64,000 bases of DNA, from IMG/VR virus record IMGVR_UViG_3300028416_000004, positions 168,515 through 232,514 of that record. One strand, written 5' to 3'. A program made the position numbers and the translations under genes. The notes under the pieces were generated by a model that was given only the letters and a program-made list of their open reading frames with translations, did no database searches and was not told the DNA's origin. This document shows positions 4,991 to 58,212 of the stretch, piece after piece; position 1 is the stretch's first letter; every line of letters begins with the position of its first letter.

Positions 4991-5114
4991 TATGTTTTTT
5001 TATTATAAATAGTAAAGTCAAAAAAATTAAAGACTTTTTTAATGCACTATTTATGTTATATATAATAAATACTAATTAATATATATAATTTAAAATAAAA
5101 ATAAACTATAAAAT

Positions 5115-15494: not shown

Positions 15495-16055
15495 ATGGAA
15501 AATTTAGAACAAATTTTAAATGAAATATATAACCAAACACCATATTTAGAGTATCAAAATAAAACAGAATTTAAAAAAGAATACCCAGCAACATATGGTG
15601 AAGTAACAAAACAATCCACAAATGCTATTGTAAACCAATTCAAAAAACACTTCAATCAAGATACAATATTTTATGACTTAGGTTGTGGGTTAGGAAAAAT
15701 GGTAATACATGTTGCTTTACAATATAACCCTAAAAAATCTTGTGGTATTGAGTTATCAAAAGAAAGAATAAAGGGAGCAAATGATTTAAAAGAAAAACAT
15801 TGTAAAGACAATAAAATTATTTCTTTTATTGAGGGTGATTTCTTTGATAATAATTTTAGTGATGCTACCGTTATTTATGTAGATAACACCGCTATGTCAC
15901 ATGATATTACAAAAAAGATTATTGATAACTTATCGAAAGGTTGTTTATTTATTTGTAGAAAAAAACCACATTTTATTGAAACTGAGGAACTTAGTGCAGA
16001 TAGATTTAAAACTGGGTATAAAAAACCAGATATACATTTTTTAATAAAAGAATAA
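15495..16055 (+). CDS. DOT1-like class I SAM-dependent methyltransferase
   Basis: YGEV, FYDLGCGLGK, CGIELS, FIEGDF and ATVIYVDN follow the DOT1 motif order. Confidence 0.75.
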   Translation: MENLEQILNEIYNQTPYLEYQNKTEFKKEYPATYGEVTKQSTNAIVNQFKKHFNQDTIFYDLGCGLGKMVIHVALQYNPKKSCGIELSKERIKGANDLKEKHCKDNKIISFIEGDFFDNNFSDATVIYVDNTAMSHDITKKIIDNLSKGCLFICRKKPHFIETEELSADRFKTGYKKPDIHFLIKE

Positions 16056-16061
16056 AAAAAT

Positions 16062-16907: not shown

Positions 16908-16925
16908 AAACCCTCCATTTTTTTT
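16894..16925 (+). terminator. Intrinsic terminator between convergent genes
   Basis: AAATGGAGG (16894-16902) pairs with CCTCCATTT (16912-16920), followed by a T-run. Confidence 0.75.
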
Positions 16926-16926
16926 A

Positions 16927-18147
16927 TTATAACAAATTAAAATAGTTGTTTGTAGTAGGGTCGTATTTTAATTCAGAACTATTTCCACCATTAAATAAAT
17001 TATGGATTAATTTATCGTATGTTTTTGATATTAATGGGTTTGATACATGATATCTCCATAAAGATTGTTTATTACGTTCCTTATAGTATTCCAGATTTTT
17101 ATCGTGGTTTTCCAATATCCAGTTTAACATTTCACCACCTTTTCTTGAATCTGAGTTTTCATAATAATAACCTATATCTTTACACATTGGTGCGTTATGT
17201 AATACAGGATAACCCATATACGCAACATCCAAATAAAGATAGTTTAATGGGTTCATAATTTGATGAGAAACAACAATATCCAAAAACTGAGATACAACAT
17301 AAGAAGTTTGATATCTATGTTCCATTGTTACTTTTTTGTCCTTATATAAGTCCAAACTTTTAATAATTGATATGAATGGTGGATTTTTATCCAAACCACC
17401 TTTTTCGTGTTTTCCGTTTGTTATCATCAACTTATCAATCTTATTTTTACCAATTTCTGTACGATAAGATTCTTCTGCAATTAAAGTTGGTATAACAGCG
17501 GTTTTAACCATATTTAAGTTTGGTTCCATAATACCAATAACCTTCTTTTCTTTTGTTGGGTCGTATCTATGGTCTTTTTTATATTTTCCTTCTTTGCTTA
17601 ATTTATTGATTGAGTTTAGGGATGAATCCAAGAAACTATTATCCCATAAGAAAGGTACACTTATTGCGTTTGTTCTATAAAGTGTTTTAAAGTAACCACT
17701 ATTATTATAATCTTGTTGTGGCACATACCAAACTTCATCAACACCTTCATCAACAATATGTGGCTTTCCTTCTTTAAATAACATCTCTTCAATGAATAAA
17801 ACATAATTGTTACCACACTTATAATTAATAACTTTATTGGTTGGTTTTTGTTTCTTAAAATCTTTAATTGTTTCGTTTGATATTTGTGCTCCCATGGATA
17901 TAATTAAATCCATTTCTCTGTATTTATCTTTTAATAACGAAACATTAATTCCATCGAAGTGTTTTGGTGGGTTATTTAAATCAATATCCAACGTATTCAA
18001 TAAATAAATTTGATAATTCTTTTTTGATTTTTTTAATAGGTTAATCATCATAAGGATGTTTAGTTTCATCCCATTTGTCCACATTGATTCTTTTATATCG
18101 TTTAATGCTATGGTAATACCTATTTTTATATTTTCTGTATCCATCAT
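16927..18147 (-). CDS. DUF2827-like putative glycosyltransferase-fold protein
   Basis: IGITI...WTNGMKLN, IGIMEPNLNMVKT and NPLNYLYLDVAYMGYPVLHNAPMCKDIGYYYE match DUF2827 as recalled (no search run). Confidence 0.7.
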   Translation of the reverse strand: MMDTENIKIGITIALNDIKESMWTNGMKLNILMMINLLKKSKKNYQIYLLNTLDIDLNNPPKHFDGINVSLLKDKYREMDLIISMGAQISNETIKDFKKQKPTNKVINYKCGNNYVLFIEEMLFKEGKPHIVDEGVDEVWYVPQQDYNNSGYFKTLYRTNAISVPFLWDNSFLDSSLNSINKLSKEGKYKKDHRYDPTKEKKVIGIMEPNLNMVKTAVIPTLIAEESYRTEIGKNKIDKLMITNGKHEKGGLDKNPPFISIIKSLDLYKDKKVTMEHRYQTSYVVSQFLDIVVSHQIMNPLNYLYLDVAYMGYPVLHNAPMCKDIGYYYENSDSRKGGEMLNWILENHDKNLEYYKERNKQSLWRYHVSNPLISKTYDKLIHNLFNGGNSSELKYDPTTNNYFNLL

Positions 18148-18380
18148 ACTATTCTTGGTTTTTTTGTGTTTTTATAGATATCAGAGTTAAATTTCTTCAA
18201 GTCATCTAATGAAATATTTAGTTTTTTTCTCCACTTTGTTATAACGTGTTCGTAACCATTATTATATAACTCACATTCTTCTAAAACTGGGTTATCAACA
18301 CCTACTTCATCTATATCATAAGATGGGTCCGAAATTAAATATAAATCTCTTGTTATCTTATAATAAATATCTTTTTCCAT
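18144..18380 (-). CDS. Small hypothetical protein
   Basis: 78-aa ORF whose stop overlaps the DUF2827 start by 4 nt. Confidence 0.6.
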   Translation of the reverse strand: MEKDIYYKITRDLYLISDPSYDIDEVGVDNPVLEECELYNNGYEHVITKWRKKLNISLDDLKKFNSDIYKNTKKPRIV

Positions 18381-18418
18381 AACTTTTAAACCTTTAAAAA
18401 TAAATATAAGGGAATAAA

Positions 18419-18446
18419 AAAAGGTCTAAATAATTTTAGACCTTTT
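18419..18446 (-). terminator. Intrinsic terminator closing the adhesin cassette array
   Basis: AAAGGTCTAAA-TAAT-TTTAGACCTTT hairpin with an A-run on the + strand (U-tract on the minus transcript), just after the 18466 stop. Confidence 0.75.
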
Positions 18447-18465
18447 ATATTGTTTTTTTTATTTA

Positions 18466-19152
18466 TTATAATCCAAATCTTCCTTTGGTTGTGTTATAAT
18501 TTTGTAATACTTCACTATCTGTTAACGCTCTATTGTAAATTAAAGTATTACCAATTTTTTTATCACTAGCAACATAACTACCACCTGGATAACTATTAAT
18601 AGATATACCTTGTGTTGTTTGTGCTTGACTACTAGAATTAGAAGACCCAAACAAAACTCCATTATGATATAGTGATACTGTAGATGTACCATTATAAGTA
18701 CCAACTATATTGTGCCAATTACCATCTTCTAAATCTGTTTTTAATATTTTAGGGGTTGCAGTACCATAAAAAAACTGTATACCACTATTCTCATAAAACC
18801 AGTATGTTCTAGAGTTAATACCTAAACCCTTACTTAATAAAACTTTATTATTAGATAATAAATTGAATTTAACCCACATAGAAACTGAAACAGAGATGGT
18901 ATTTAAAGAATCTGAATTTGATATTGAAACATAATCATTCACACCATCAAATGACACAATTCCTCCATTATCAGTTAAGTATGTTACACCATTGGTTAAT
19001 GTACCATCATTATTATTTGATGTTAAATCATTCCAAATAGTACCTGTACCTGGATATGATAATGTATTTCCTGCATCTAAATGTAACACTAACCCATCTG
19101 TTATTATATTTGATGTTTGTCTTGGTCTCACCCCTACTCTTGTTTGTGCCAT
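18466..19152 (-). CDS. LamG/concanavalin A-like lectin-domain protein (putative receptor-binding or decoration protein)
   Basis: GLVLHLDAG...SYPGTGTIWNDL, FDGVNDYV, SVSMWVK, WHNIVGTY and IYNRALTDSEV. Confidence 0.85.
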   Translation of the reverse strand: MAQTRVGVRPRQTSNIITDGLVLHLDAGNTLSYPGTGTIWNDLTSNNNDGTLTNGVTYLTDNGGIVSFDGVNDYVSISNSDSLNTISVSVSMWVKFNLLSNNKVLLSKGLGINSRTYWFYENSGIQFFYGTATPKILKTDLEDGNWHNIVGTYNGTSTVSLYHNGVLFGSSNSSSQAQTTQGISINSYPGGSYVASDKKIGNTLIYNRALTDSEVLQNYNTTKGRFGL

Positions 19153-19175
19153 AATATTTTGTTTTTTAATTTATA

Positions 19176-19835
19176 TTATTTTTGTTTTCCGTTTCCTGAA
19201 TTGTATAGTTGTGATACTTCTGTTGGTGTTAGTTCTCTGTTCCAAATACCTATTTCATCCATATTACCATTTAAGAATTGACTAGATGTTCTCCTACTTA
19301 ATATAAAACCATTTACAAAACCCAAAGATGTACAATCAGTGAATGTTGTTGTACCAGCAGAAATTAAATTACCATCCATATACATATTTAATAATTTAGT
19401 TGACTCATTCCAAGCGAAAGCAACATGTCTCCAAACATTATTACCTATAGTTAAACTTTGTGATAAATAACCCCCATTTGTTTTGAATGCGTATAAAATT
19501 ATTGATGTAAATTGGAAAGTAAAACCCATAGACCCATTTGAACCGAAATTAGGTGTTTGAAAAAAACAGGCCGTACCTGTATTATTTTTATACACCCATC
19601 CACTTACCGTAAAATCTCCAGTAATACCAACATCACCTGTGTATTGTACATAATCATTAACACCATCAAACTTAAATCCTTGATTAATTTTACCTGTGTC
19701 ATATGTTGTTCCATTAATTAATGTTAAATCGTGTCCATTCCCTGTTTGGTCTATTGGTGTTCCATCAGCTCTATAATAAGCCAATAATCCATCCCATATA
19801 CCAGGTCTTCTAACCCCCACTCTTGTTTGTGCCAT
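19176..19835 (-). CDS. LamG/concanavalin A-like lectin-domain protein
   Basis: FDGVNDYV, FTVSGWVY, WRHVAF, LYMDG-like MYMDG and GNMDEIGIWNRELT. Confidence 0.85.
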   Translation of the reverse strand: MAQTRVGVRRPGIWDGLLAYYRADGTPIDQTGNGHDLTLINGTTYDTGKINQGFKFDGVNDYVQYTGDVGITGDFTVSGWVYKNNTGTACFFQTPNFGSNGSMGFTFQFTSIILYAFKTNGGYLSQSLTIGNNVWRHVAFAWNESTKLLNMYMDGNLISAGTTTFTDCTSLGFVNGFILSRRTSSQFLNGNMDEIGIWNRELTPTEVSQLYNSGNGKQK

Positions 19836-19879
19836 TTTTTATATTGTTTTAATTTTATTTGTTATTTTTAAAGAAAAAA

Positions 19880-19905
19880 AAAGGGTTTAAATAAATAAAC
19901 CCTTT
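19880..19905 (-). terminator. Intrinsic terminator-like hairpin
   Basis: AAAGGGTTTA-N6-TAAACCCTTT 10-bp stem with an A-run on the + side. Confidence 0.65.
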
Positions 19906-19922
19906 GTTTAATCTTTTAATTT

Positions 19923-20129
19923 TTAGATTACCTCTTCAGTTGATGTCCATTCAGGTCCTTCACAAATTGTAATCATTTCTTCTTTTGTGTAATCTGTGAA
20001 TGAATCACCTTCAACGATGAATTTTGTTCCATCGATTGACTTTCTTACTGTATCAGCTGTTGAATAACCTGTACATAATGAAAAGTCGAATGTTGTAATC
20101 TCTGCGATGTCTTTAATTGCGTATCCCAT
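19923..20129 (-). CDS. Small acidic protein (putative fibre partner/chaperone)
   Basis: 68 aa; RKSIDGTKF...EW pattern; lies between adhesin genes. Confidence 0.65.
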   Translation of the reverse strand: MGYAIKDIAEITTFDFSLCTGYSTADTVRKSIDGTKFIVEGDSFTDYTKEEMITICEGPEWTSTEEVI

Positions 20130-20222
20130 TTTTTTTGTTTTTAATTAATTATTTGTTATTTTATTCAATTATAAATATCTACCAATTTTTAATAATAGAG
20201 ATATTTATATTTTTTTTTTTTT

Positions 20223-21656
20223 TTAAATTCCACCACCATCGGTGATTGTCCATAAATCACTTAAAATTAAGTTTGATTTTGCTGCTTCAGCTGGACTTCC
20301 TATTGTGTATTTGGACGTACCAAAGTTAACAGACAAACCACTTACGGGGTTAAGTGCGTTCCATGCAACTAATAACTTATCATATTCAGTTGTTGTTATA
20401 GTTGAACCTCTTAGGAAATCTTTCATATTAGAAACAGTAGATATATCCCAAGTGTCTAATCCAACAACATCACACACACCTAAACCATAAAATGGTTCAT
20501 ACATAATAACTGGTCCAGATGTTCTTATTGTAATACCTGTAACATCAATATAATCAGCACCACACCCATTAAACATACCAGCGTATCTATTACCAAATGT
20601 TGTACAATTACTTAAATCCCAACCACTTACATTTAATGATGTTAAATTAACTGTGGGTGAGAAGGTATTAGATGTTGAAGTGACTTGAGAAACATCCCAT
20701 CCTGTTAAATCTAAATCGCCTGATATACCACAACCACGGAACATACCAATAATATTAGTGAATGGTACTGTTATATCTTCAATACCAGTTATTGTGGTTA
20801 AATTAGGTGTAGCTTGGAAGGTACTTGAGAAATTAACACCTAGTGTTCTAAAAGTAACTCCACTTACATCAACAGAAGTCAATGATATGTTATAGTAGAA
20901 CATTTGTCTGAAATCACTACAATTAGATAAATCCATTCCTGACATATCTAAAGATGTTAATGATGTACAACCTCTAAAAGTTTGGTACATAGTATATACT
21001 TTAGAAGTGTTAAGTGTGTTAAACCCTGTTACTGTAGTTAATGAGGTACAATTATAAAATACCTCTCTAAATTGAACATTTGAAGTTGTGTTTAATTTAC
21101 ATCCAGTAAAATCTATTGAAGTTAATGATGTACAAGATTGGAAACCACCAGTATAACCCCAACCAAAAGAAGTACAAGAAGTTAAATCCCAACCAGCTAA
21201 AGACATTGTGGTTAATGATGTACAACCATTAAAAGCATTTGCTAATGTATTAACTAATGATGTATTTGGAATATCTGTGGCATAAATTTCTAAATTACTA
21301 CACCCTTGGAAAGAAGTACCCATACTTCTCCATTCATTATAACCCCACTGATTAACTGACATCAATTTTTCTCTATCAGTACCATTAAATTTAGGCCAAG
21401 GTAAATTACCTAAGACTTTAATTGTATAAATTCCTGGTGTTGAATAGACGTGAGTTAAATCAGTATCATTATATGATGTAATTGTTGATGTTGTACCATC
21501 ACCCCACTCAATCGTTGCATTATAAACACCTAAATTTCCAGCACCTAAAATAAATGTATCACTCGCACTACCAGCATTTTCAGTGTTTATTGTAAATATA
21601 AATTTTCTTTTTTCCAAGGAACCATCTTTGATTCCAACTCTTATCTGTGCTGCCAT
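20223..21656 (-). CDS. DUF285/BspA-like leucine-rich-repeat surface protein with N-terminal PKD-like domain
   Basis: IEWGDG...THVYSTPGIYTIKV (PKD-like), VNQWG, and repeated ~25-aa units (F..CTSLT.LD.SGWD.S.V). Confidence 0.8.
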   Translation of the reverse strand: MAAQIRVGIKDGSLEKRKFIFTINTENAGSASDTFILGAGNLGVYNATIEWGDGTTSTITSYNDTDLTHVYSTPGIYTIKVLGNLPWPKFNGTDREKLMSVNQWGYNEWRSMGTSFQGCSNLEIYATDIPNTSLVNTLANAFNGCTSLTTMSLAGWDLTSCTSFGWGYTGGFQSCTSLTSIDFTGCKLNTTSNVQFREVFYNCTSLTTVTGFNTLNTSKVYTMYQTFRGCTSLTSLDMSGMDLSNCSDFRQMFYYNISLTSVDVSGVTFRTLGVNFSSTFQATPNLTTITGIEDITVPFTNIIGMFRGCGISGDLDLTGWDVSQVTSTSNTFSPTVNLTSLNVSGWDLSNCTTFGNRYAGMFNGCGADYIDVTGITIRTSGPVIMYEPFYGLGVCDVVGLDTWDISTVSNMKDFLRGSTITTTEYDKLLVAWNALNPVSGLSVNFGTSKYTIGSPAEAAKSNLILSDLWTITDGGGI

Positions 21657-21658
21657 AA

Positions 21659-21880
21659 TTATTCTGTTATTTCTTCTTCTTCATTGTTATCAACATCAAT
21701 TCCATAAACATTTAATAACTCTGTTTTCCAAGATGTTTCATCATCGAATATTGTGTGATTCGGTAAACCTGTTTCGGTTTGTTGTGGTGGGTCAGTTTTT
21801 CCGTAGTGAACAATTGAATTATCTTCATTTGTTGCAATCCACCATTTTTCATTCATTTCTGTTTTTGTTACTATTATCAT
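21659..21880 (-). CDS. Small acidic protein, translationally coupled to the DUF285 gene
   Basis: 73 aa with an acidic tail; its stop is 2 nt before the 21656 start. Confidence 0.65.
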   Translation of the reverse strand: MIIVTKTEMNEKWWIATNEDNSIVHYGKTDPPQQTETGLPNHTIFDDETSWKTELLNVYGIDVDNNEEEEITE

Positions 21881-21908
21881 AATTTATTTTTTTATATAAA
21901 TATCATAT

Positions 21909-21933
21909 AAAAAGGGAGATATTCACCTCCCTT
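21909..21933 (-). terminator. Intrinsic terminator after BspA-like gene 2
   Basis: AAGGGAG-N8-CTCCCTT hairpin; the + strand A-run is a U-tract on the minus transcript. Confidence 0.75.
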
Positions 21934-21942
21934 CATTTTTTT

Positions 21943-22056
21943 TTATTAAACCGTTACAGTCCATCCTTTTGATGTTGCTATAGCAATATCTTCAGGAGTT
22001 AAATCAGCTGTACCAGGGTTATACCTAACATCTATTGTTTGAGATGTTGCGTTACC
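21943..22056. repeat. 114-bp perfect direct repeat, copy 1 (3' end of BspA-like gene 2)
   Basis: Identical by eye to 24501-24614 (offset 2558). Confidence 0.9.
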
Positions 22057-24144
22057 TAGGTTGTTAAATATGTTTATTAAAGCCAATCTAGACAATTTGT
22101 TTGTATTATAACTATGTGATTTAGTTAAACCAAAAATATTAGATTCAGATAATTCAAAATTACTTCTTAACATAAGGTTAGCACTTGTTACGTTAGACAT
22201 ATCTAAACTACCAATTTTTCTTAGTTCTATACACCTGTCAAAAGTATAAGTCACATTTGTCGTTAAAGAAAAATCCAAATCAGGAATAATTTCAATTTTA
22301 CTAGAATTAAATAAATAATGTAAATTTGATTGTGAATTACTTGTATTGATTTGTGGTATAGTTTTTAAACCTGTACCTATAAACATTGCGTATATATTTG
22401 CACTATCTGTGTTAAAGTCTGATGGTAATTCTCTTAATGATGAACAACTATGGAACATATAACTCATATTTGAAACACCTGAAGTATTAATTAAACCATT
22501 TGGAAATCCTTCTAATGAACTACAATATATAAACATATAGAATGTTGTAGTACAATTTTGTAAATCTAATAATGGTAAGTTTTTTAAATTACTACATCCT
22601 TGGAAAACATTACTTAAAACTGTTGCAGATGAAGTATCTAAACCAGTAACAGTTTCTAAACTACTACAATTTAAAAACATTTTATTCATAGTAGTCACAT
22701 TACCAGTGTTTTGTAAATTAACTTCTTTTATCTTATTACTACCATCAAACATTTGTATTGTACTTGTACAAGAAGTTAAATCCAATGATATTTTTTCTAA
22801 TGAAGAACAATCTTTAAACATATAATCACATTTCGTTGAGTTTGAAGTATCAAACCCTTCAGGTAATTCTAATATACCTGAATTAAAAAACATATATTGC
22901 ATATTTGTAACACTGTCTGTGTTTAATAAATGTATTTTTCTTAAAGATGAACAATAACCAAACATACCATACATATTTGTACAACCACTAGTATCAAAAT
23001 CTTTAGGTATTTCTAATAACGAATTACAACTATGAAACATATAACCCATATTTGAAACACCAGATGTGTTAATTAAACCATTTTCAAATCTAACAATAGA
23101 AGAACAACGAACAAACATATAGTATGCTGTAGTACAAGAAGTAAAATCTATTTGTGGTACATCAATTAAACTAGAGCAACTTTCAAATAAATTACTTAAA
23201 TTTGTTGCAGATGAAGTATCTAAACCTGTTACAGTTTCTAAACTACTACAACCTTTAAACATTTTATTCATGTTTGTCACATTACCAGTATTTTGTAAAT
23301 TAGCTTCTTTTATCTTATTACTACCCTCAAAAATTTGTACTGTATTTGTACAAGAAGTTAAATCTAACGATATTTTTTCTAATGAAGAACAATTTTTAAA
23401 CATACTACCACATTCCGTTAGGTTTGAAGTGTCAAAATCAGATGGTAACTCTATTAAATTAGAACACCCATTAAACATACTAGTACCATTTGTAATGTTT
23501 GTCATATCAAATGATACCAATTTTTTAATTTTTGAATTAACAAAAAGACTAGTCGCATTAGTTATACTATGTGAACCAATAAATTCGATTTGTTCCATTT
23601 TTTTATGGTACGCACTCCCAGGTCTAAAAATACTTATATTTTGACCAGCTATTTTAACATCCAAAATATTAGAATAAGTAGCTACGTTTAATTCAGATTG
23701 ATAAGCGTAAGCTAAATCAAATTTAGTTAATGCACCTGGTACTTGTGGTGTTATTTTAACAATTACTTGTCTATATCCTTCAGATGTTAATGTTGACTCA
23801 TCAAGGTCTTCCCAATTCAATACATGATTTACTCTGTGAGTCGCACTTGTTTTTGATATACCATCATAATTAATAATGTTTCCATCACCCCAATCAACAG
23901 TAAAATCATCATTAACTGCAAAACCAACATAACTTGGTGTGTTTTCATATACACTAACCAACATGTAAACAACTTCATCACCATTATTAACTTCAGGCAA
24001 CGTTAACCAATCACTTGGTCTCACATAAGTATCATTAAATGTTGTTGTTTTTTCATATGTATAATTTAATTTATTATATCTTACCGTAGCATTCGGTAAG
24101 TACATATATTTTGGGGCTTGAACCCCTCCTACTACTTGTGCCAT
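21946..24144 (-). CDS. BspA/DUF285-like leucine-rich-repeat adhesin, paralog 2
   Basis: 732 aa; DWGDG beta-domain followed by ~23-aa MF..CSSL..L..LDTS..TNM repeats; paralog of 24504..26726. Confidence 0.85.
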   Translation of the reverse strand: MAQVVGGVQAPKYMYLPNATVRYNKLNYTYEKTTTFNDTYVRPSDWLTLPEVNNGDEVVYMLVSVYENTPSYVGFAVNDDFTVDWGDGNIINYDGISKTSATHRVNHVLNWEDLDESTLTSEGYRQVIVKITPQVPGALTKFDLAYAYQSELNVATYSNILDVKIAGQNISIFRPGSAYHKKMEQIEFIGSHSITNATSLFVNSKIKKLVSFDMTNITNGTSMFNGCSNLIELPSDFDTSNLTECGSMFKNCSSLEKISLDLTSCTNTVQIFEGSNKIKEANLQNTGNVTNMNKMFKGCSSLETVTGLDTSSATNLSNLFESCSSLIDVPQIDFTSCTTAYYMFVRCSSIVRFENGLINTSGVSNMGYMFHSCNSLLEIPKDFDTSGCTNMYGMFGYCSSLRKIHLLNTDSVTNMQYMFFNSGILELPEGFDTSNSTKCDYMFKDCSSLEKISLDLTSCTSTIQMFDGSNKIKEVNLQNTGNVTTMNKMFLNCSSLETVTGLDTSSATVLSNVFQGCSNLKNLPLLDLQNCTTTFYMFIYCSSLEGFPNGLINTSGVSNMSYMFHSCSSLRELPSDFNTDSANIYAMFIGTGLKTIPQINTSNSQSNLHYLFNSSKIEIIPDLDFSLTTNVTYTFDRCIELRKIGSLDMSNVTSANLMLRSNFELSESNIFGLTKSHSYNTNKLSRLALINIFNNLGNATSQTIDVRYNPGTADLTPEDIAIATSKGWTVTV

Positions 24145-24184
24145 AATTTTTTATTTTTTTAATTAATTTGTTATTGTTTTTTTA

Positions 24185-24415
24185 TTATAATGTAGTTTCT
24201 TCTTCTGAAATATTATCTTCTTCTTCCTCTTCAGGTTTATTGAATATATCAATAAATCCTTCAGGTTCATCATCATACCATTTCCATCCATCAACTGGAT
24301 AGTTGTATGTATCTTTTTGTTCTTTTAATAAAGAATAATCACCATTATACACCGCATTCGGTGCATAATACCAACCTTCTTCGGTTTCTTTGTAAAATCC
24401 TAGTTTTAATTCCAT
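24185..24415 (-). CDS. Small acidic aromatic-rich partner protein, copy 2
   Basis: 76 aa; near-identical to 26756..26980 (FYKETEEGWYYAPNAVYNGDYSLLKEQKDTY). Confidence 0.75.
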   Translation of the reverse strand: MELKLGFYKETEEGWYYAPNAVYNGDYSLLKEQKDTYNYPVDGWKWYDDEPEGFIDIFNKPEEEEEDNISEEETTL

Positions 24416-24461
24416 TTTTCTTTTTTTTATTTTTTAATTTGTTATTTTTTTTATAAATATG

Positions 24462-24490
24462 AAAAAAGAGAGGGAGAATACCCCCTCTTT
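24462..24490 (-). terminator. Intrinsic terminator after BspA-like gene 1
   Basis: AGAGGG (24469-74) pairs with CCCTCT (24483-88); the A6 on + is a U-tract on the minus transcript. Confidence 0.75.
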
Positions 24491-24500
24491 AATTATTAAA

Positions 24501-24614
24501 TTATTAAACCGTTACAGTCCATCCTTTTGATGTTGCTATAGCAATATCTTCAGGAGTTAAATCAGCTGTACCAGGGTTATACCTAACATCTATTGTTTGA
24601 GATGTTGCGTTACC
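24501..24614. repeat. 114-bp perfect direct repeat, copy 2 (3' end of BspA-like gene 1)
   Basis: Identical by eye to 21943-22056. Confidence 0.9.
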
Positions 24615-26726
24615 CAAGTTGTTGAAAATGTTAACTAATTCAGTTCTAGATAACTTACCATGAAGATAAGTATGTGATTTAGTTAAACCATATATATCAG
24701 ACTTACCAATACCATAGTTATTTCTGAACATATTTGTTGCGTTAGTTACAGATGAAAAATCCAAACTACCTATTTTTCTAAGTCTTGAACAATAACCAAA
24801 CATTTCTCTACTATCTGTAATATTGGAAGTATCCAAATCAGGAATTTCTTCAATACCTGATTGTCTAAACATATAATAACCACTAGTTATATTTGAAGTA
24901 TTAATAGATGGTATTGTTTTTAAATTAGATGTTGTTTGAAACATATAAAGCATATTTGTTGCACTATCTGTATTAAAATCAGATGGTATTTCTATTAAAT
25001 TTGAACAATAACCAAACATACTTTGCATATTCGTTACACCTGATGTATTAATTATATCATTATCAAATCTTATGATTGAATTACACCCATAAAACATACT
25101 TGAAGTCCTTGTACAACTTTGTAAGTTAATTTTAGGTAAATCCATTAATTTATTACAACCATAAAACATTTGATGTGTTATTGTCATTGAACTTGTATCT
25201 AAACCAGTTATTTTAACTAAGTTTGAACAGCCGTAAAAAGCATCTTGTCCACTTGTTACATTGGATGTATTTATTAAATTAATTTCTCTTATCTGAGAAG
25301 AATTTTTAAACATATTGTGCATACTTGTACAACTAGATAAGTCTAATGTTGGTAACGTTTTTAATTTATAACAATGCGAAAACATCTCTCCAGCGTGTGT
25401 TATATTAGAGAAATCTAAATCAGGAATTTCTTCAATATCTGCTTGTCTAAACATATAATAACCACTAGTTATATTTGAAGTATTTAATAAAGGTATTCTT
25501 CTTAAAGAACTACATTTATTAAACATATAAGTCATATTTGTTGCACTAGATGTATCAAAATCTTTAGGTATTTCTATTAAATTTGAACAATGACCAAACA
25601 TACCTTGCATATTCGTTACACCTGATGTATTAATTATATCATTATCAAATCTTATGATTGAATTACACGCATAAAACATACTTGAAGTCCTTGTACAACT
25701 TTGTAAGTTAATTTCAGGTAAATCCATTAATTTATTACAACCATAAAACATTTGATGTGTTATTGTCATTGAACTTGTATCTAAACCAGTTATTTTAACT
25801 AAGTTTGAACAGCCGTAAAAAGCATCTTGTCCATTTGTTACATTGGATGTATTTATTAAATTAATTTCTCTTATCTGAGAAGAATGTTTAAACATATTTT
25901 GCATACTTGTACAACTTGTCAAATCTAATGTTGGTAATTTTTCTAATGAACTACAATACGCAAACATGTCATATACATTTGTTAAACTTGTTAAATCCAT
26001 ATCTTCTGGTAACTCTATTAATTTAGTACATTGTCTAAACATATAATAACCATTAGTGATATTAGACATATCTAAAGAAACTATTTTTTTAATAGTTGAA
26101 CCATTAAACATACTGTTACTAGCCACAATACTATTTGAACCAACAAACTCAAATTGTTCGAATTTTGGGTTATTACCACCACCAACTTTTAAATAATTGA
26201 TGTTTTGTCCAGCCATTTTCATATCCAAAAGACCTGAAAGACCTACACCACCATATACACCATTAAGCATTGATTGATAGAATGATTGATTATTGAAATG
26301 AGTTAAACCACCAGGAACTTGTGGTGTGATTTTAACAATTGCTTGTCTATATCCTTCTGATGTTAATGTTGATGGGTCAATGTCATCCCAATTTATTGAA
26401 TAACCTGTTTTACCATCAACAGCATTCACACTTGTACTATTTTGGTCATAATTAATAATATTTCCATCACCCCAATCAACAGTATAATCACCTCTAACTG
26501 AGAATACGATACTATTTGGGTTATTTTCATAAATTGCAACCAACATGTAAATTACTTCATCACCTTCATTTACCGCTGGTAAATCCAACCAATCCGCTGG
26601 TCTTGTATAAGTTTTGTATGGTGTTGTATCGATTGGATAATTATAATTTAATTTATTATATCTTACCGTAGCGTTAGGTAAGTAAATATATTTAGGTGCT
26701 TGTACACCTCCTACTACTTGTGCCAT
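24504..26726 (-). CDS. BspA/DUF285-like leucine-rich-repeat adhesin, paralog 1
   Basis: 740 aa; same N-terminus (MAQVVGGVQAPKY) and C-terminus as 21946..24144; LRR-like repeats. Confidence 0.85.
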   Translation of the reverse strand: MAQVVGGVQAPKYIYLPNATVRYNKLNYNYPIDTTPYKTYTRPADWLDLPAVNEGDEVIYMLVAIYENNPNSIVFSVRGDYTVDWGDGNIINYDQNSTSVNAVDGKTGYSINWDDIDPSTLTSEGYRQAIVKITPQVPGGLTHFNNQSFYQSMLNGVYGGVGLSGLLDMKMAGQNINYLKVGGGNNPKFEQFEFVGSNSIVASNSMFNGSTIKKIVSLDMSNITNGYYMFRQCTKLIELPEDMDLTSLTNVYDMFAYCSSLEKLPTLDLTSCTSMQNMFKHSSQIREINLINTSNVTNGQDAFYGCSNLVKITGLDTSSMTITHQMFYGCNKLMDLPEINLQSCTRTSSMFYACNSIIRFDNDIINTSGVTNMQGMFGHCSNLIEIPKDFDTSSATNMTYMFNKCSSLRRIPLLNTSNITSGYYMFRQADIEEIPDLDFSNITHAGEMFSHCYKLKTLPTLDLSSCTSMHNMFKNSSQIREINLINTSNVTSGQDAFYGCSNLVKITGLDTSSMTITHQMFYGCNKLMDLPKINLQSCTRTSSMFYGCNSIIRFDNDIINTSGVTNMQSMFGYCSNLIEIPSDFNTDSATNMLYMFQTTSNLKTIPSINTSNITSGYYMFRQSGIEEIPDLDTSNITDSREMFGYCSRLRKIGSLDFSSVTNATNMFRNNYGIGKSDIYGLTKSHTYLHGKLSRTELVNIFNNLGNATSQTIDVRYNPGTADLTPEDIAIATSKGWTVTV
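24830..25940. repeat. Intragenic tandem duplication with 582-nt (194-aa) period
   Basis: For example 25025 aligns to 25607 and 24841 to 25423; a ~330-bp core differs at only about 5 positions. Confidence 0.85.
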
Positions 26727-26755
26727 AATTTTCTATTTTTTTAATTAATTTGTTA

Positions 26756-26980
26756 TTATAATTCACCTTCAGGTGTTTCTTCAGTTATTTCTTCTTCAGG
26801 TTTATTGAATATATCAATAAATCCTTCAGGTTCATCATCATACCATGACCACCCATCCGTTGGATAAGTGTAGGTATCTTTTTGTTCTTTTAATAAAGAA
26901 TAATCACCATTATACACTGCATTTGGTGCATAATACCAACCTTCTTCGGTTTCTTTGTAAAATCCTGGTTTTGTTTCCAT
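26756..26980 (-). CDS. Small acidic aromatic-rich partner protein, copy 1
   Basis: 74 aa; paralog of 24185..24415 (offset about 2565). Confidence 0.75.
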   Translation of the reverse strand: METKPGFYKETEEGWYYAPNAVYNGDYSLLKEQKDTYTYPTDGWSWYDDEPEGFIDIFNKPEEEITEETPEGEL

Positions 26981-27012
26981 TTTTCTTTTTTTTTATTTTT
27001 TAATTTGTTATT

Positions 27013-27591
27013 TTATAGTTTTATTAACACATCATGAGTAATTAATCGAATTAATTTTGTTGTTTCAGGGTTATTTTTATGTGTTTTTCTTATAGAAGAA
27101 TAAAACCCCATTCCAGACCAAGCATATTCAACCAATATTCCGTTTGGTTTTAACTCATCAACAATTTTTTGATACATACCCATCAATTCATTTTCATTCT
27201 TAAATGGTGTGTAACAATAAACAATATCATATTTACCATAATTATGATTCATAATATCATCAACATACAAATCGATATTATTATCCCAATAACCTTTTAG
27301 GTTTTTATTAAAAAAATCAACATACTCTTTATACTTCTCAACACCAAAAAAATTAAAAGTTTTGTCCTCAAATTTTTTGGATTCAATATAAAAGTTATAC
27401 ATCATTGTACCCAAACCAAATCCAGCATCACATACGTTAAATGTTGTTTTTGATGGTGTTAAATTTATCATTCTGGGAAAAATATTTTCGAATTGGGTTG
27501 TTGTTGGTTCGATATAATACCACTCATTGGTGTTATCAACAAAATCATTATTGTTTAATTCTTGTGATTTTATTTTATATTCTTTTTTCAT
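27013..27591 (-). CDS. Class I SAM-dependent methyltransferase
   Basis: VCDAGFGLG (motif I), FFGVEK, YVDDI and YDIVYCY. Start placed at Met 27591 because the listed ATG at 27627 lies inside a terminator hairpin. Confidence 0.75.
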   Translation of the reverse strand: MKKEYKIKSQELNNNDFVDNTNEWYYIEPTTTQFENIFPRMINLTPSKTTFNVCDAGFGLGTMMYNFYIESKKFEDKTFNFFGVEKYKEYVDFFNKNLKGYWDNNIDLYVDDIMNHNYGKYDIVYCYTPFKNENELMGMYQKIVDELKPNGILVEYAWSGMGFYSSIRKTHKNNPETTKLIRLITHDVLIKL

Positions 27592-27694: not shown

Positions 27695-30445
27695 TTATGC
27701 TAATGGAGTAAAGTTACCATAATAATCAGGGTTTACAGCAATTGCTTCTTGTCCGTAAATCACAACTGATGCTCCAGTTTCAGGTGCTACATTGAACGTG
27801 AAGGTACCTTGAGTGTTACCTTTAGCATCTACTACTGAACTGAAAGTATAATCAACATCTCTTTCTTGTAATAAACCATTTAAGTAGATTGCTCCACTTC
27901 CATTAATTAATACACTGAAATCTACAGTTACACCATCTCCGACTGCACTATTTAAAATCACAAACTTCCCGACATTAACAGCGTTTAAAATCATAGATTT
28001 GATTTCAACTAATGCTCCGTTAACACCATCTTTGATAGCTTGGTCGATTGAGTTTTGAACTGAAATCTCAGCAGATAACACAACTTCTAATGAAGCGTCA
28101 GCAGCAAGTCTTGCAGCTTTCTCTACAGAGTCAGCAGCTTCGAATGCAGCTGTTACAGCAGCGTCACCAGCAATTCTTGCGTTTTGTTCAGCTAAGTCAG
28201 CAGATTCTCTAGCAGCAACTTCAGTTGAGATATCAGCGTTTACTTTAGCTTCTAATGAAGCGTCAGCAGCTTCTCTAGCAGCAACTTCAGTTGAGATATC
28301 AGCGTTTACTTTACCTTCTAGTGAAGCGTCAGCAGATTCTCTAGCAGCAACTTCAGTTGATAAAGCAGCGTCATTACTCAATACGTAAGAAGCAAATGCT
28401 TGGTCGTTTTCAGTATCAACAGAGTTGATTAGTGTTACGATTTCAGCAAATGAATCTTTATCAGCATCAGAAGCCTCTAAGATAGCATCAATTCTACTTT
28501 TTTCAGTAGATACTTTAGCCTCTAATGAAGCGTCTCCTGAAACTCTCGCTGATTCTTCAGCAGATACGTCAGCATCGATTTTAGCTTCTAATGAACCATC
28601 AGCAGCAACTCTTGAACTAGCTTCAGAACTGATTGCAGCTTCTCTAGCAGCAACTTCAGTAGAGTATTCAATAGCGTGAGTTGATTCCTCAGTAGACAAT
28701 CTTAATTCTAATGAAGCATCAGCAGCAGCTCTAATACTAGCTTCAGCAGATACGTCACCTGTTACAGTAGCATCAAAGTTATCTAAAATTCCTTTAGTAA
28801 TGAATGATAAAGCATCATATCCAGCTAAACTATCTGGTTGAACACCAGCTTTGTTTAAACCTTCGAATGTTCTTTCTCCAGCTGTACCTTCAGCAATAAC
28901 ATCTTTCATTCTAATGTTGTTATCACCATCAACTTCGATTGTTACATCATCAGTTAAAGGTAATGCATCGATTTCAGCTTCCAATGAAGTATCACTAGCT
29001 AAACGAGTTGATTCTTCAGCATCTAATTCACTAACAACTTCTGCGAATGAATCGATTGAGTTTAAGTCAGTGTTAGCGATGATTGAAGAAACCTCACTTG
29101 ATAATACTGTAGCGATTGAATCTTCAGCTTCAGTAGCTCTTGAAATCTCAGCAGCTAATGCAACATCTAATGAACCATCAGCAGCAATTCTTGCAGCTTC
29201 TTCACTAGCTATAGATTCATTTAAATCCTTAGACTCAAGTTCGATTTTTTCATTTAATGAAGCATCAGCAGATACTCTTGAACTTACTTCAGATTCGATA
29301 GCTGTATCATGCTGAGCATCTTTAGCTGTAGCTCTAGCTATCTCAGCGTTTAATTCATTTTGAAGGTCAGTATCTGTATTTATCGCTCTAGTTATTTCGT
29401 CATCGATTTTAGCTTCTAATGAACCATCAGTAGCAATTCTTGCAGATTCTTCAGCTGACATGTCAGCATCGATTTTAGCTTCTAATGAACCATCAGCAGC
29501 AATTCTTGCAGATTCTTCAGCTGACATGTCAGCATCGATTTTAGCTTCTAATGAAGCGTCAGCAGCTTCTCTAGTAGCTTTCTCTACAGAGTCAGCAGCT
29601 TCGAATGCAGCCGTTACAGCAGCATCACCAGCAATTCTTGCGTTTTGTTCAGCTAAGTCAGCAGATTCTCTAGCAGAAACCTCAGTTGAGATATCAGCGT
29701 TTACTTTACCTTCTAATGAAGCGTCACCTGAAATTCTTGAAGATACTTCAGTTGATAAAGCAGCATCATTAGATAATACATAAGATGCAAATGCTTGGTC
29801 ATTTTCAGTATCAACAGAGTTGATTAATGTTACGATTTCAGCGAATGAATCTTTATCAGCATCAGAAGCCTCTAAAATAGCATCAATTCTACTTTTTTCA
29901 GTAGATACTTTAGCCTCTAATGAAGCGTCTCCTGAAACTCTCGCTGATTCTTCAGCAGATACGTCAGCATCGATTTTAGCCTCTAATGAAGCGTCTCCTG
30001 AAACTCTCGCTGATTCTTCAGCAGATACGTCAGCATCGATTTTAACTTCTAATGAACCTTCAGCATCTTTAGCTCTAGTAGTTTCATCACTGATTGATGT
30101 CTCTAATGAACCTTCAGCATCTTTAGCTCTAGCAACTTCAGCATCGATAGCTGCATCATGTTCAGCATCTTTTGCTTCAGCTCTAGCAACTTCAGCAGCG
30201 ATTTCAGCATCATGTTCAGCATCTTTTGCTTCAGCTCTACTCTTCTCGTTGGTAATTGCTTGTTCTAAATTTTGTAAGTCGTCAACTAACCCAGGTAAAT
30301 CTGATTTCTCAATACCAATTGGTCTTAAAATTTCAGCATCAGTCAATTTACCGTCTGATTGTTTATTTAAGATAATCCTAGTTCCACCTGTAAAATTGTT
30401 TGTTGGCTCTACTGGTGCTTCTAATAAAAATAATCTATTTTCCAT
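27695..30445 (-). CDS. Long repetitive coiled-coil tail fibre/whisker-like protein
   Basis: 916 aa Ala/Glu/Ser-rich 18/21/22-aa repeats (EESAR.AAD.SLEAKID), DSFAEIV motifs, and a C-terminal IYLNGLLQ..DY..F..AP..G domain also seen twice in 31808..32521. Confidence 0.7.
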   Translation of the reverse strand: MENRLFLLEAPVEPTNNFTGGTRIILNKQSDGKLTDAEILRPIGIEKSDLPGLVDDLQNLEQAITNEKSRAEAKDAEHDAEIAAEVARAEAKDAEHDAAIDAEVARAKDAEGSLETSISDETTRAKDAEGSLEVKIDADVSAEESARVSGDASLEAKIDADVSAEESARVSGDASLEAKVSTEKSRIDAILEASDADKDSFAEIVTLINSVDTENDQAFASYVLSNDAALSTEVSSRISGDASLEGKVNADISTEVSARESADLAEQNARIAGDAAVTAAFEAADSVEKATREAADASLEAKIDADMSAEESARIAADGSLEAKIDADMSAEESARIATDGSLEAKIDDEITRAINTDTDLQNELNAEIARATAKDAQHDTAIESEVSSRVSADASLNEKIELESKDLNESIASEEAARIAADGSLDVALAAEISRATEAEDSIATVLSSEVSSIIANTDLNSIDSFAEVVSELDAEESTRLASDTSLEAEIDALPLTDDVTIEVDGDNNIRMKDVIAEGTAGERTFEGLNKAGVQPDSLAGYDALSFITKGILDNFDATVTGDVSAEASIRAAADASLELRLSTEESTHAIEYSTEVAAREAAISSEASSRVAADGSLEAKIDADVSAEESARVSGDASLEAKVSTEKSRIDAILEASDADKDSFAEIVTLINSVDTENDQAFASYVLSNDAALSTEVAARESADASLEGKVNADISTEVAAREAADASLEAKVNADISTEVAARESADLAEQNARIAGDAAVTAAFEAADSVEKAARLAADASLEVVLSAEISVQNSIDQAIKDGVNGALVEIKSMILNAVNVGKFVILNSAVGDGVTVDFSVLINGSGAIYLNGLLQERDVDYTFSSVVDAKGNTQGTFTFNVAPETGASVVIYGQEAIAVNPDYYGNFTPLA
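28110..29995. repeat. Nested intragenic repeats (63/66-nt units; ~450-bp block duplicated at 1395/1461-nt offset)
   Basis: 28411 aligns to 29806 (offset 1395) and 28116 to 29577 (offset 1461); 63-nt tandem units at ~29403-29540 and ~29900-30050. Confidence 0.85.
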
Positions 30446-58211: not shown

Positions 58212-58212
58212 T

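What the first reader, a model, noticed from the sequence alone, without database searches (positions are those of the whole stretch)
19855..27012. 12-mer AATAACAAAT(T/A)A placed 19-20 nt before six start codons of the cassette array
Seen on + as TAATTTGTTATT at 24164, 24435, 26746 and 27001, and as TTATTTGTTATT at 19855 and 20149. The gaps to the start codons are 19, 19, 19, 20, 19 and 19 nt. I did not see it at this spacing before genes outside the array. Known: Bacteroidota mostly lack Shine-Dalgarno sites and use A-rich leaders. Inference: a dedicated translational enhancer or repressor site, an RNA processing site, or a shared recombination core at cassette junctions.
Basis: partly seen in the sequence, partly recalled or inferred. 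Interest (0 to 1): 0.6.

Follow-up and report, generated by a model that had tools for sequence, protein, structure and literature searches.

The report
Repeated leader motif joining phage fibre cassettes
A 12-base motif sits just upstream of six genes in a variable fibre/adhesin gene array of a marine jumbo phage, where it forms the core of a short repeated leader, and wild variants of the phage have gained or lost whole gene cassettes by recombining inside that repeat.

Summary
AATAACAAAT(T/A)A (gene strand = window minus strand) occurs seven times in the window and seven times in the whole 232.5-kb phage genome. Six copies lie 19 or 20 nt before ATGs in a 7.2-kb array; about 0.5 copies are expected by chance. 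Two pairs of copies are tandem paralogs, so there are about four independent contexts.

The array encodes small proteins (68-76 aa), DUF285/BspA-type leucine-rich-repeat proteins and Laminin-G proteins. It lies in a T4-like jumbo phage of a probable Flavobacteriia host.

The motif is not a host promoter, a Shine-Dalgarno site, a known RNA family or a recombinase site. It is the conserved core of a roughly 30-nt junction module: the 12-mer plus an A-rich leader.

Natural variants from metagenomes have the cassettes in other orders. One Laminin-G cassette is flanked by two exact 29-nt copies of motif plus leader. Another variant lacks exactly that cassette and keeps one copy.

It therefore works like the PeSL "mobile regulatory cassettes" of T4-type phages: an expression signal that also serves as a homologous-recombination joint.

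The parts
19836..19866 (-). Junction module 1: 12-mer (19855-19866) plus 19-nt A-rich leader, before the 219-aa Laminin_G_3 gene. It follows a terminator with no other promoter-like motif in between.
20130..20160 (-). Junction module 2: 12-mer (20149-20160) plus 19-nt leader, before the 68-aa gene. The P1 motif lies 9 nt upstream.
24145..24175 (-). Junction module 3: 12-mer (24164-24175) plus 19-nt leader, before the 732-aa DUF285 gene. It starts 9 nt after the stop codon of the 76-aa gene.
24416..24446 (-). Junction module 4: 12-mer (24435-24446) plus 19-nt leader, before the 76-aa gene.
26727..26757 (-). Junction module 5: 12-mer (26746-26757) plus 19-nt leader, before the 740-aa DUF285 gene. 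It overlaps the stop codon of the 74-aa gene by 2 nt. Paralog of module 3 (1 mismatch in 31 nt).
26981..27012 (-). Junction module 6: 12-mer (27001-27012) plus 20-nt leader, before the 74-aa gene. It abuts the stop codon of the upstream ORF (204 aa here, called as 192 aa in metagenome records). Paralog of module 4.
19153..19186 (-). Degenerate relative of the module before the 228-aa Laminin_G_3 gene. The same degenerate form is found before the 229-aa gene of variant L205.
   Evidence: (family D15)
20170..20177 (-). P1 motif TATTTATA, the genome's commonest upstream motif and its probable late promoter, 9 nt upstream of module 2.
24452..24459 (-). P1 motif, 5 nt upstream of module 4 and just after the terminator.
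21895..21902 (-). P1 motif before the 73-aa gene. In this genome that gene has no 12-mer; in variants L204, L235 and L240 it has the 12-mer instead.
24465..24490 (-). Intrinsic terminator after the 740-aa gene.
21912..21933 (-). Terminator-like hairpin after the 732-aa gene. The scan lists this palindrome on the + strand; on the gene strand it is followed by a run of five T.
19880..19905 (-). Intrinsic terminator after the 68-aa gene, 13 nt (19867-19879) upstream of the 12-mer of module 1.
18419..18446 (-). Intrinsic terminator after the 228-aa gene, followed by P1 (18399-18406) and the 78-aa gene.
26756..26980 (-). 74-aa small gene. Tandem paralog of the 76-aa gene at 24185-24415.
24504..26726 (-). 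740-aa DUF285/BspA-type leucine-rich-repeat protein; N-terminus MAQVVGG.
21946..24144 (-). 732-aa DUF285 protein. Its first 200 residues are 62% identical to those of the 740-aa protein.
20223..21880 (-). Cassette of the 73-aa gene (21659-21880) and the 477-aa DUF285 gene (20223-21656). It sits at a different place in the array in variant L204.
19923..20129 (-). 68-aa small gene.
18466..19835 (-). Laminin_G_3 cassette slot: 219-aa plus 228-aa genes here; 449 aa, 299+131 aa, 225 aa or empty in variants.

Best explanation
The 12-mer is the conserved core of a portable intergenic junction module of about 30 nt: the 12-mer plus an A-rich leader without a Shine-Dalgarno site. The module precedes each separately initiated gene of a hypervariable fibre/adhesin cassette array in a T4-like jumbo phage of a probable Flavobacteriia host.

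Shown: the module is a short direct repeat at cassette boundaries, and natural variants have gained, lost or reshuffled cassettes with the crossover inside the module. With no site-specific recombinase found in the (88% complete) genome record, this points to general homologous recombination, as with the PeSL elements of T4-type phages.

Inferred: the module's everyday job is expression of the gene behind it. I commit to an action on the mRNA. In this reading it is an unstructured upstream platform at -31 to -20 that helps ribosomes of a host without Shine-Dalgarno sites load onto each cistron, both inside operons and at the 5' end of transcripts started at the P1 late promoter. Repeated recombination at the module would also keep its copies identical.
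For: Real and non-random: 7 copies observed against 0.5 expected, six of them 19-20 nt before ATGs, and none elsewhere in 232.5 kb except one inside a coding region.

Cassette junction: in L204 and its relatives the 449-aa Laminin-G cassette is flanked by two exact 29-nt copies of 12-mer plus leader. L240 has the same flanks, one copy and no cassette. Its two alignments to L204 overlap exactly on the 29-mer, and identity steps from 98.2% to 88.8% there. Other alleles occupy the same slot: 219+228, 299+131 and 225 aa. Cassette order differs between the window and L204, and two of five homology breakpoints abut the 12-mer. No serine or tyrosine recombinase is found in the genome.

The 12-mer is the best-kept part of the junctions. 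Between variants the leader behind it changes (12 versus 19 nt for the same small gene) and the sequence in front of it is a stop codon, a terminator or P1, while the 12-mer stays.

Lies in the transcript: in four contexts it follows the P1 motif (by 4-9 nt in three, about 31 nt in L015). Those are modules 2 and 4, L207, and the scaffold-like gene of L015, where a hairpin lies in between. In modules 3, 5 and 6 and in L204 it sits directly on or after the upstream stop codon inside operons.

Host context: the genome-wide upstream profile has A peaks at -13 to -11, -6 and -3 and no Shine-Dalgarno site. This is the Flavobacterium johnsoniae initiation signature (PMC6847099).

The motif is predicted to be single-stranded, with unpaired probability 0.72-0.92.

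Leaders holding the AACAAA core mark the most highly expressed virion genes of the clade: 40 of 74 capsid/scaffold leaders against 69 of 797 other genes. The exact 12-mer stands 19 and 21 nt before the scaffold-like and capsid genes of L015.
Against: The known Bacteroidia initiation determinants end at -14, so a role at -31 to -20 has no precedent.

Before the Laminin-G gene the module follows a strong terminator with no P1 in every variant. At the 73-aa gene, P1 and the module replace each other between variants. Both facts are more simply explained if the module holds a promoter.

The spacing is 12 nt in some variants.

The closest capsid relative (G001, 82% identical capsid protein) has no leader copy at all. 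Orthologous leaders in other relatives carry only loose versions, so the exact sequence is not needed over long evolutionary distances.

The capsid/scaffold enrichment is not phylogenetically independent.

A 12-nt identity is too short for efficient homologous recombination. The documented crossover used a 29-nt repeat.
Confidence: 0.45

Rival explanations
1. The 12-mer is a promoter element. It would be a -10-only or -7-like box (its TAACAAAT part ends 21 nt before the ATG) read by host RNA polymerase carrying one of the phage's own sigma factors, giving the array genes their own, perhaps very late, transcription starts. The junction and recombination role would be the same as in the best explanation.
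For: The phage encodes three sigma-70-family proteins and no RNA polymerase subunit, so several phage-specific promoter classes are expected. A relative shows how sharply such classes can be defined. The module is the only conserved element between a strong terminator and the Laminin-G gene in all variants. At the 73-aa gene the module and terminator+P1 substitute for each other. The distance from TAACAAAT to the ATG equals the modal distance of the host-type -7 box. From general knowledge, repeated upstream motifs in phage genomes are most often promoters.
Against: There is no conserved -35 or -33 partner upstream of the six copies. Three copies lie only 4-9 nt downstream of P1, which would put two polymerase sites on top of each other. 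In the scaffold-like gene of L015 the motif lies about 31 nt downstream of P1, inside the leader. It does not match the Bacteroidota -7 consensus on either strand. It matches the T4 late box in at most 6 of 8 positions.
Confidence: 0.3
2. The exact 12-mer has no sequence-specific function. Any A-rich unstructured leader would do, and the copies are identical only because the junctions descend from one another by duplication and are homogenised by recombination or gene conversion.
For: Two pairs of copies are tandem paralogs. The three large-gene copies share a 61-nt family at 67-75% identity that includes the conserved N-terminal codons (D15). Natural point and deletion variants of the 12-mer exist: C to T before the 68-aa gene in L212, and one A lost before the 733-aa gene in L204/L207. 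G001 lacks the motif altogether. With A-rich leaders, about 1.5 exact hits would be expected by my rough estimate across all leaders fetched, so the L015 match is only moderately surprising.
Against: The 12-mer is invariant across at least four non-paralogous contexts while both flanks differ. It is kept where the leader behind it was replaced (12 versus 19 nt). Paralog leaders are 97% identical where the adjoining coding DNA is 78% identical. Two exact copies at matching distance stand before adjacent capsid-module genes in L015.
Confidence: 0.12
3. The 12-mer is an RNA processing site. A host or phage endoribonuclease would cut the polycistronic late transcripts there, releasing single-gene mRNAs with a uniform 5' end.
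For: The motif is always on the sense strand, single-stranded and AU-rich, and sits between cistrons. The region is present in nine metatranscriptome runs.
Against: There is no evidence for cleavage. No RegB-like or other nuclease was looked for or found, and the copies at the very 5' end of P1 transcripts would need no processing.
Confidence: 0.06
4. The 12-mer is the target of a site-specific recombinase, of the shufflon, invertase or integron type, that rearranges the array in a programmed way.
For: The copies sit at cassette boundaries, and cassette order varies in nature.
Against: All copies are direct repeats, not inverted ones. The motif has no internal dyad symmetry. The genome holds no serine or tyrosine recombinase, and the controls for both searches rang. 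The documented event used a 29-nt homology, and identity to the reference changes across it, which marks homologous exchange between diverged genomes.
Confidence: 0.02

Closest known systems
PeSL elements (promoter-early stem-loop), the 'mobile regulatory cassettes' of T4-type phages (PMC2839356, PMC4122927)
   Same: Both are short conserved regulatory sequences repeated between variable ORFs of a T4-like genome. Indels and replacements between close relatives have their breakpoints in the repeat. No dedicated recombinase is involved. The effect is modular shuffling that may change host adaptation.
   Different: PeSLs are composites of an early sigma-70 promoter and a terminator stem-loop of roughly 50-60 bp (size from memory), lying in regions of genes without known relatives. 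Here the core is a 12-mer plus an A-rich leader of about 30 nt. It has no recognisable promoter hexamers, only half the copies adjoin a stem-loop, the genes are late virion fibre/adhesin genes, and the host lineage lacks Shine-Dalgarno sites.
Bacteroidia translation-initiation region: A at -3, -6 and -11 to -14, no Shine-Dalgarno site (PMC6847099)
   Same: The leaders behind the 12-mer, and the phage's genome-wide upstream profile, show this signature. The proposed role of the 12-mer extends the same logic of unstructured A-rich mRNA.
   Different: The described determinants end at -14 and are single-base preferences. The 12-mer is a defined sequence at -31 to -20 that contains an invariant C.
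T4 late promoter TATAAATA (from my own knowledge)
   Same: It is a short AT-rich box without a -35 partner, found before most late genes, including genes inside operons. The genome's P1 motif TATTTATA matches it in 6 of 8 positions.
   Different: The 12-mer matches in at most 6 of 8 positions (5 of 8 in the T variant) and often lies just downstream of P1.
A/C-rich unstructured translational enhancers: TMV omega leader, CA multimers in E. coli, S1-dependent standby sites (from my own knowledge)
   Same: These are A-rich leaders with CA that lack secondary structure, act upstream of the ribosome's core binding site and are independent of a Shine-Dalgarno site.
   Different: They are loosely defined by composition. 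None is known as an exact 12-mer repeated before a gene set, and none has been described for Bacteroidota or their phages.
Conserved N-terminus / variable C-terminus exchange of phage receptor-binding proteins
   Same: The large array proteins share the N-terminal peptide MAQ-x-(R/V)-VG and then diverge. One L204-versus-window breakpoint lies about 60 codons into the Laminin-G gene.
   Different: That mechanism uses coding homology. The finding concerns the non-coding joint in front of the gene.

Membership tests
PeSL-type mobile regulatory cassette (T4-type phages) | Repeated between variable ORFs in a plastic region of a T4-like genome | tested here: met
   T4-like baseplate, portal, capsid and terminase relatives are present. 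Array content and order vary among metagenomic variants.
PeSL-type mobile regulatory cassette (T4-type phages) | Breakpoints of indels or replacements between close relatives fall inside the element | tested here: met
   L240 against L204: a precise 1,380-bp cassette presence/absence between two exact 29-nt copies of 12-mer plus leader, with identity stepping from 98.2% to 88.8%. Two of five window-versus-L204 breakpoints abut the 12-mer.
PeSL-type mobile regulatory cassette (T4-type phages) | Composite of an early sigma-70-type promoter and a terminator stem-loop | tested here: not met
   The 12-mer contains no host-type promoter on either strand. Stem-loops precede modules 1 and 4; modules 2, 3, 5 and 6 have none in this genome, though the copy equivalent to module 2 follows one in variants. 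The adjoining promoter-like motif P1 is of the late type.
PeSL-type mobile regulatory cassette (T4-type phages) | Excised circular products of recombination between copies | not testable with these tools
   This needs PCR or long reads on infected cells.
Bacteroidota sigma-A promoter | -7 box TAnnTTTG (TAHHTTTG) with an upstream TTG | tested here: not met
   There is no TAHHTTTG at any of the six sites on the antisense strand, and the sense strand has none either. The motif's reverse complement is one base short of the box.
T4-type late promoter | TATAAATA box 6-7 nt upstream of the transcript start | tested here: inconclusive
   The best register matches 6 of 8 positions in the A variant and 5 of 8 in the T variant. 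No transcript starts are available.
Shine-Dalgarno ribosome-binding site | Purine-rich GGAGG-like core 5-10 nt before the start codon | tested here: not met
   The leaders are A/T with 0-2 other bases. G is 3-6% at -14 to -5 genome-wide.
Known Bacteroidia initiation determinants | Adenines at -3, -6 and -11 to -14 | tested here: not met
   These are met by the leaders and by the genome as a whole, but the 12-mer itself lies at -31 to -20, outside the described region.
Site-specific recombination site (shufflon, Gin/Cin invertase, integron attC) | Cognate serine or tyrosine recombinase, and inverted or dyad-symmetric sites | tested here: not met
   No Resolvase or Phage_integrase domain is found in the genome, and the controls rang. 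All copies are direct repeats.
Any Rfam RNA family | Match to a curated covariance model | tested here: not met
   Window 16000-24400, E up to 1: only a sub-threshold microRNA chance hit outside the array.

The most novel reading that the evidence does not exclude
The 12-mer is a sequence-specific ribosome-recruiting or factor-binding element that needs no Shine-Dalgarno site. It would act at -31 to -20 on mRNAs translated by Bacteroidia ribosomes, and phages would use it for their most needed virion proteins. It would be the first defined upstream translational enhancer for a phylum whose start-site selection is still only described by single adenines. Its reuse as a plug-and-play joint would make the adhesin array a natural cassette-exchange system.
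Probability: 0.15. Interest if true: 0.7.

Novelty: new variant of a known kind. Interest (0 to 1): 0.5.

Why it matters
Receptor-binding and adhesin genes decide which hosts a phage can infect. Here a marine jumbo phage keeps several such genes as cassettes separated by one short repeated leader. Wild populations show cassettes being swapped, moved and dropped at exactly that repeat. This extends the PeSL idea of a regulatory sequence that doubles as a recombination joint: from early genes of enterobacterial and vibrio T4-type phages to late virion genes of a Bacteroidota phage. It also gives a concrete short sequence to test as an expression signal in a host lineage that lacks Shine-Dalgarno sites.

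Tried and rejected
**Close relatives in the annotated phage collection.** Megablast of the array found nothing. tblastn with the 740-aa and baseplate proteins found only relatives at about 30% identity or less.

**IMG/VR searches.** The N-terminal domain of the 740-aa protein and the 74-aa protein returned only the same phage, plus two small unrelated contigs without the motif.

**Contig end.** The end of contig L007 looked like a breakpoint but is a poly-A assembly artefact.

**Whole-genome scan of the closest capsid relative (G001, 518.8 kb).** There are 18 copies of the 10-nt core, none followed by an A-rich leader and start codon (judged by eye from the printed contexts); none is a leader copy.

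**Antisense host promoter.** The reverse complement resembles the Bacteroidota -7 box but is one base short. No TAHHTTTG is present at any site. Rejected.

**RNA pairing partner or structure.** The motif is predicted to be unpaired, and no conserved complementary segment was found.

**Rfam.** Nothing.

**RegA-type translational repressor (PF01818).** No hit, but the control genomes did not ring either, so the result is uninformative.

**Read evidence.** The look-up of sequencing runs listed 24 runs, 9 of them RNA. No depth or 5'-end data exist. Later references stop at 24400 or use the paralog at 26700-27080. Only local scripts on the session's own files touched those places.

**Contigs that begin at the motif (L239, L242).** I read these as assembly breaks at a repeat, not as transcript starts.

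**Costly protein searches.** The search for homologous proteins and the search of protein representatives were not needed and were not run. No alternative genetic code was used.

Full report
**1. The observation**

The genes lie on the minus strand, where the motif reads AATAACAAAT(T/A)A. The distances to the ATGs at 19835, 20129, 24144, 24415, 26726 and 26980 are 19, 19, 19, 19, 19 and 20 nt.

Shuffles of the window give 0.51 +/- 0.72 matches, and none of 100 reaches seven. The window is the last 64 kb of a 232,514-bp virus record with 27% G+C. The whole record has only these six copies plus one inside a coding region at 9053-9064. One 1-mismatch copy elsewhere has the same 19-nt spacing, before a 113-aa ORF of unknown function.

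The copies are not six independent events. Window 27015-24405 and 24448-21846 form a tandem duplication of about 2.6 kb at 70% identity. The three copies before large genes also belong to a 61-nt repeat family that runs into the conserved N-terminal codons (family D15). About four independent contexts remain.

**2. The surroundings**

The genome is a T4-like jumbo myovirus. It has baseplate wedge, SbcC-like nuclease and helicase genes in the window. Its portal, terminase and major capsid genes are related to those of L015.

A Bacteroidota, probably Flavobacteriia, host is inferred from three facts:
- The host-type -7 box TAnnTTTG stands before 26 genes.
- The upstream base profile has A peaks at -13 to -11, -6 and -3 and no Shine-Dalgarno site, as described for Flavobacterium johnsoniae (PMC6847099).
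- The nearest annotated baseplate relatives include Flavobacterium phages.

All runs that hold the array are seawater samples or an unspecified metagenome.

The phage has three sigma-70-family genes and no RNA polymerase subunit. Its commonest upstream motif, which I call P1, is TATTTAT(A/T). P1 stands before 64 genes, regularly follows terminators and precedes virion genes, so it is probably the late promoter.

The array, read in the direction of transcription, is:
- 916 aa and 204 aa
- [12-mer] 74 aa, [12-mer] 740 aa, terminator
- P1, [12-mer] 76 aa, [12-mer] 732 aa, terminator
- P1, 73 aa and 477 aa
- P1, [12-mer] 68 aa, terminator
- [12-mer] 219 aa, then 228 aa, terminator
- P1, 78 aa and 406 aa

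.

The 740-, 732- and 477-aa proteins are DUF285/BspA-type leucine-rich-repeat proteins. The 219- and 228-aa proteins are Laminin_G_3 lectin folds. All five begin with MAQ (or MAAQ), one residue, then (R/V)-VG. A tail-fibre-like gene lies just upstream at 31808-32521.

**3. What the motif is not**

- It is not a host promoter on either strand. Its reverse complement is one base short of TAHHTTTG.
- It is not a Shine-Dalgarno site.
- It matches no Rfam family.
- It is not the site of a dedicated recombinase. The genome has no serine or tyrosine recombinase while the control genomes rang, and all copies are direct repeats.
- It has no conserved partner about 17-20 nt upstream.
- It is predicted to be single-stranded in the mRNA, with unpaired probability 0.72-0.92.

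**4. Relatives**

The closest capsid relative is G001, a 518.8-kb complete record whose capsid protein is 82% identical. It has 18 copies of the 10-nt core, none in a leader. It uses quite different upstream motif classes.

A more distant phage, L015/L016, has a capsid protein 44-49% identical and a Laminin-G protein 39% identical with the same N-terminal peptide. It carries the identical 12-mer 19 nt before its scaffold-like gene and 21 nt before its major capsid gene.

Looser versions (AATAACAA plus A/T) stand before the capsid or scaffold genes of L106, L122 and L158. In the capsid-relative loci, the AACAAA core occurs in the 45 nt upstream of 40 of 74 capsid/scaffold genes but only 69 of 797 other genes (Fisher 4e-20). 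AATAACAA occurs in 7 of 74 against 12 of 797 (5e-4). These counts share ancestry and overstate independence.

In several small phage contigs, ACAAA-rich leaders start right after a canonical -7 box and so lie in the 5' untranslated region (L014, L018, L021, L022). The element is therefore not a cassette-only device. As a kind, it goes with leaders of strongly expressed virion genes.

**5. Natural variants of the same phage**

This is the most informative result. Exact-protein look-ups of the small array proteins returned metagenome contigs with other cassette arrangements.

L204 reads: DUF285 gene end, 75 aa, 733 aa, terminator, 68 aa, terminator, 449-aa Laminin-G, 73 aa + 478 aa, terminator, 78 aa + 406 aa. 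Compared with the window, the 73+477 cassette sits elsewhere, and the 219+228 pair is replaced by one 449-aa gene. The slot behind the 68-aa gene holds 219+228, 449, 299+131, 225 or 229 aa in different contigs.

In L204, L234, L235, L236 and L237 the 12-mer also precedes the 73-aa gene, with an 18-nt gap and overlapping the upstream stop codon. In the window that gene has terminator + P1 and no 12-mer.

In L204 the Laminin-G cassette is flanked by two exact 29-nt direct repeats, each the 12-mer plus 17 nt of leader, at L204:3071-3099 and 4451-4479. Contig L240 has the 68-aa gene, the terminator, one copy of the 29-mer and then the 73-aa gene. L240 1-335 aligns to L204 2766-3099 at 98.2%, and L240 307-958 aligns to L204 4451-5099 at 88.8%. 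The two alignments overlap exactly on the 29-mer.

That is the footprint of homologous exchange within the repeat between diverged genomes. A 29-nt repeat is too short to be collapsed by an assembler using 31-letter words (k = 31 is my recollection of how Logan contigs are built; no tool output gives it), so I take L240 as real, although it is a single contig.

Of the five homology breakpoints between L204 and the window:
- two abut the 12-mer (21938|27012 at its 5' edge, and 21893, which is 5 nt behind it);
- one follows a terminator;
- one lies at a stop codon;
- one lies about 60 codons into the Laminin-G gene.

Across variants the 12-mer is the best-kept part of the junctions. The leader behind it can differ: 12 nt in L204/L207 against 19-20 nt in the window for the same small gene. 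The sequence in front of it is a stop codon, a terminator or P1. Variants of the 12-mer itself exist. L212 has C to T, the copy before the 733-aa gene has lost one A, and a degenerate form stands before the 228/229-aa genes.

**6. Mechanism**

Shown: the 12-mer is the core of a repeated junction module of about 30 nt at cassette boundaries, and cassette presence/absence and mosaicism have their crossover in it. With no recombinase found, this is general homologous recombination. That is how PeSL elements act in T4-type phages (PMC2839356; PMC4122927).

Inferred: the module is there because each gene needs an expression signal. I prefer an action on the mRNA, for four reasons:
- In four contexts the motif follows P1 and so lies in the transcript.
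- In the others it lies on or directly behind the upstream stop codon inside an operon.
- It stays within 12-21 nt of the ATG.
- Its AACAAA core marks the leaders of the clade's most expressed genes.

The main rival is a promoter read by a phage sigma. Two facts favour that reading. The Laminin-G gene sits behind a strong terminator with only the module in front of it in every variant. And P1 and the module replace each other before the 73-aa gene. I put the mRNA-leader reading at 0.45 and the promoter reading at 0.30. The data in hand cannot separate them.

**7. Comparison and novelty**

The element works like a PeSL, but it fails the defining composite of an early promoter plus a stem-loop. 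It is shorter, it belongs to late virion genes, and it comes from a phage of a host lineage without Shine-Dalgarno sites. I file it as a new variant of a known kind. It is not part of the known Bacteroidia initiation determinants, which end at -14.

**8. Limits**

For that reason no collection-wide scan for the motif was made. The key deletion variant rests on one short contig. Gene calls are my own longest-ORF calls.

Noticed in passing
G001 (IMG/VR record behind L092, 518,809 bp), mainly its first 50 kb; loci L173-L175: About 30 genes carry a sharply conserved bipartite upstream motif, AGTGTAAC-N17-CGTATAGTAC. In 28 of 58 copies of the second box the ATG starts 5 nt after CGTATAGT, which suggests near-leaderless early mRNAs and a phage-specific sigma or polymerase.
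   Followed up: partly
window 26726, 24144, 21656, 19835 and 19152 (gene starts, minus strand); L015:8903: All five large array proteins (DUF285 and Laminin-G folds alike), and the Laminin-G protein of the distant phage L015, begin with the same peptide: MAQ/MAAQ, one residue, then (R/V)-VG. This is probably a shared anchor to the virion. In L015 the gene lies in the head module, so these may be head or whisker fibres rather than tail fibres.
   Followed up: partly
G000 57223-58089 (-), 58184-59047 (-) and 165718-166602 (+); loci L200-L202: There are three phage-encoded sigma-70-family proteins. Two have regions 1.2, 2, 3 and 4; one is diverged and matches only region 2. No RNA polymerase subunit is present.
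   Followed up: partly
whole genome; in the window for example 4990-5010, 18399-18406, 21895-21902: The motif TATTTAT(A/T) stands before 64 genes, typically 12-24 nt from the ATG and directly after terminators. It matches the T4 late box TATAAATA in 6 of 8 positions.
   Followed up: partly
window 27695-30445 (-): The 916-aa ORF is built almost wholly of 66-nt (22-aa) repeats. Alleles of 610 and 729 aa exist in other samples. The 740-aa DUF285 gene has a 546-aa allele that lacks internal repeats.
   Followed up: no
L015:15728-15869; upstream of the scaffold-like gene in L106, L122, L146 and L161: Leaders of the scaffold-like (g22-like) gene in capsid relatives share one layout: P1, a small GC-containing hairpin (often with a T run), then the A-rich leader. 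This may be a conserved attenuator or operator.
   Followed up: no
L005:5943-6095; L006:8001-8126: The 74/76-aa small array protein has relatives at 53-57% identity at the end of the structural module in small, otherwise unrelated phage contigs, without the motif. Its function is unknown; it has no Pfam or PHROG hit.
   Followed up: no
window 16062-16907 (+) and 16927-18147 (-): Next to the array lie a 281-aa gene with an alanyl-tRNA-synthetase-type domain (tRNA-synt_2c) and a 406-aa DUF2827 gene, according to the Pfam marks on metagenome gene calls.
   Followed up: no
L052:1386-3860: An unrelated 36% G+C phage contig repeats a 24-nt block four times before early-looking genes. The block is a host-type -7-like box followed by a stretch that contains 9 of the 10 core bases of the motif, placing that stretch at the transcript start.
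   Followed up: no
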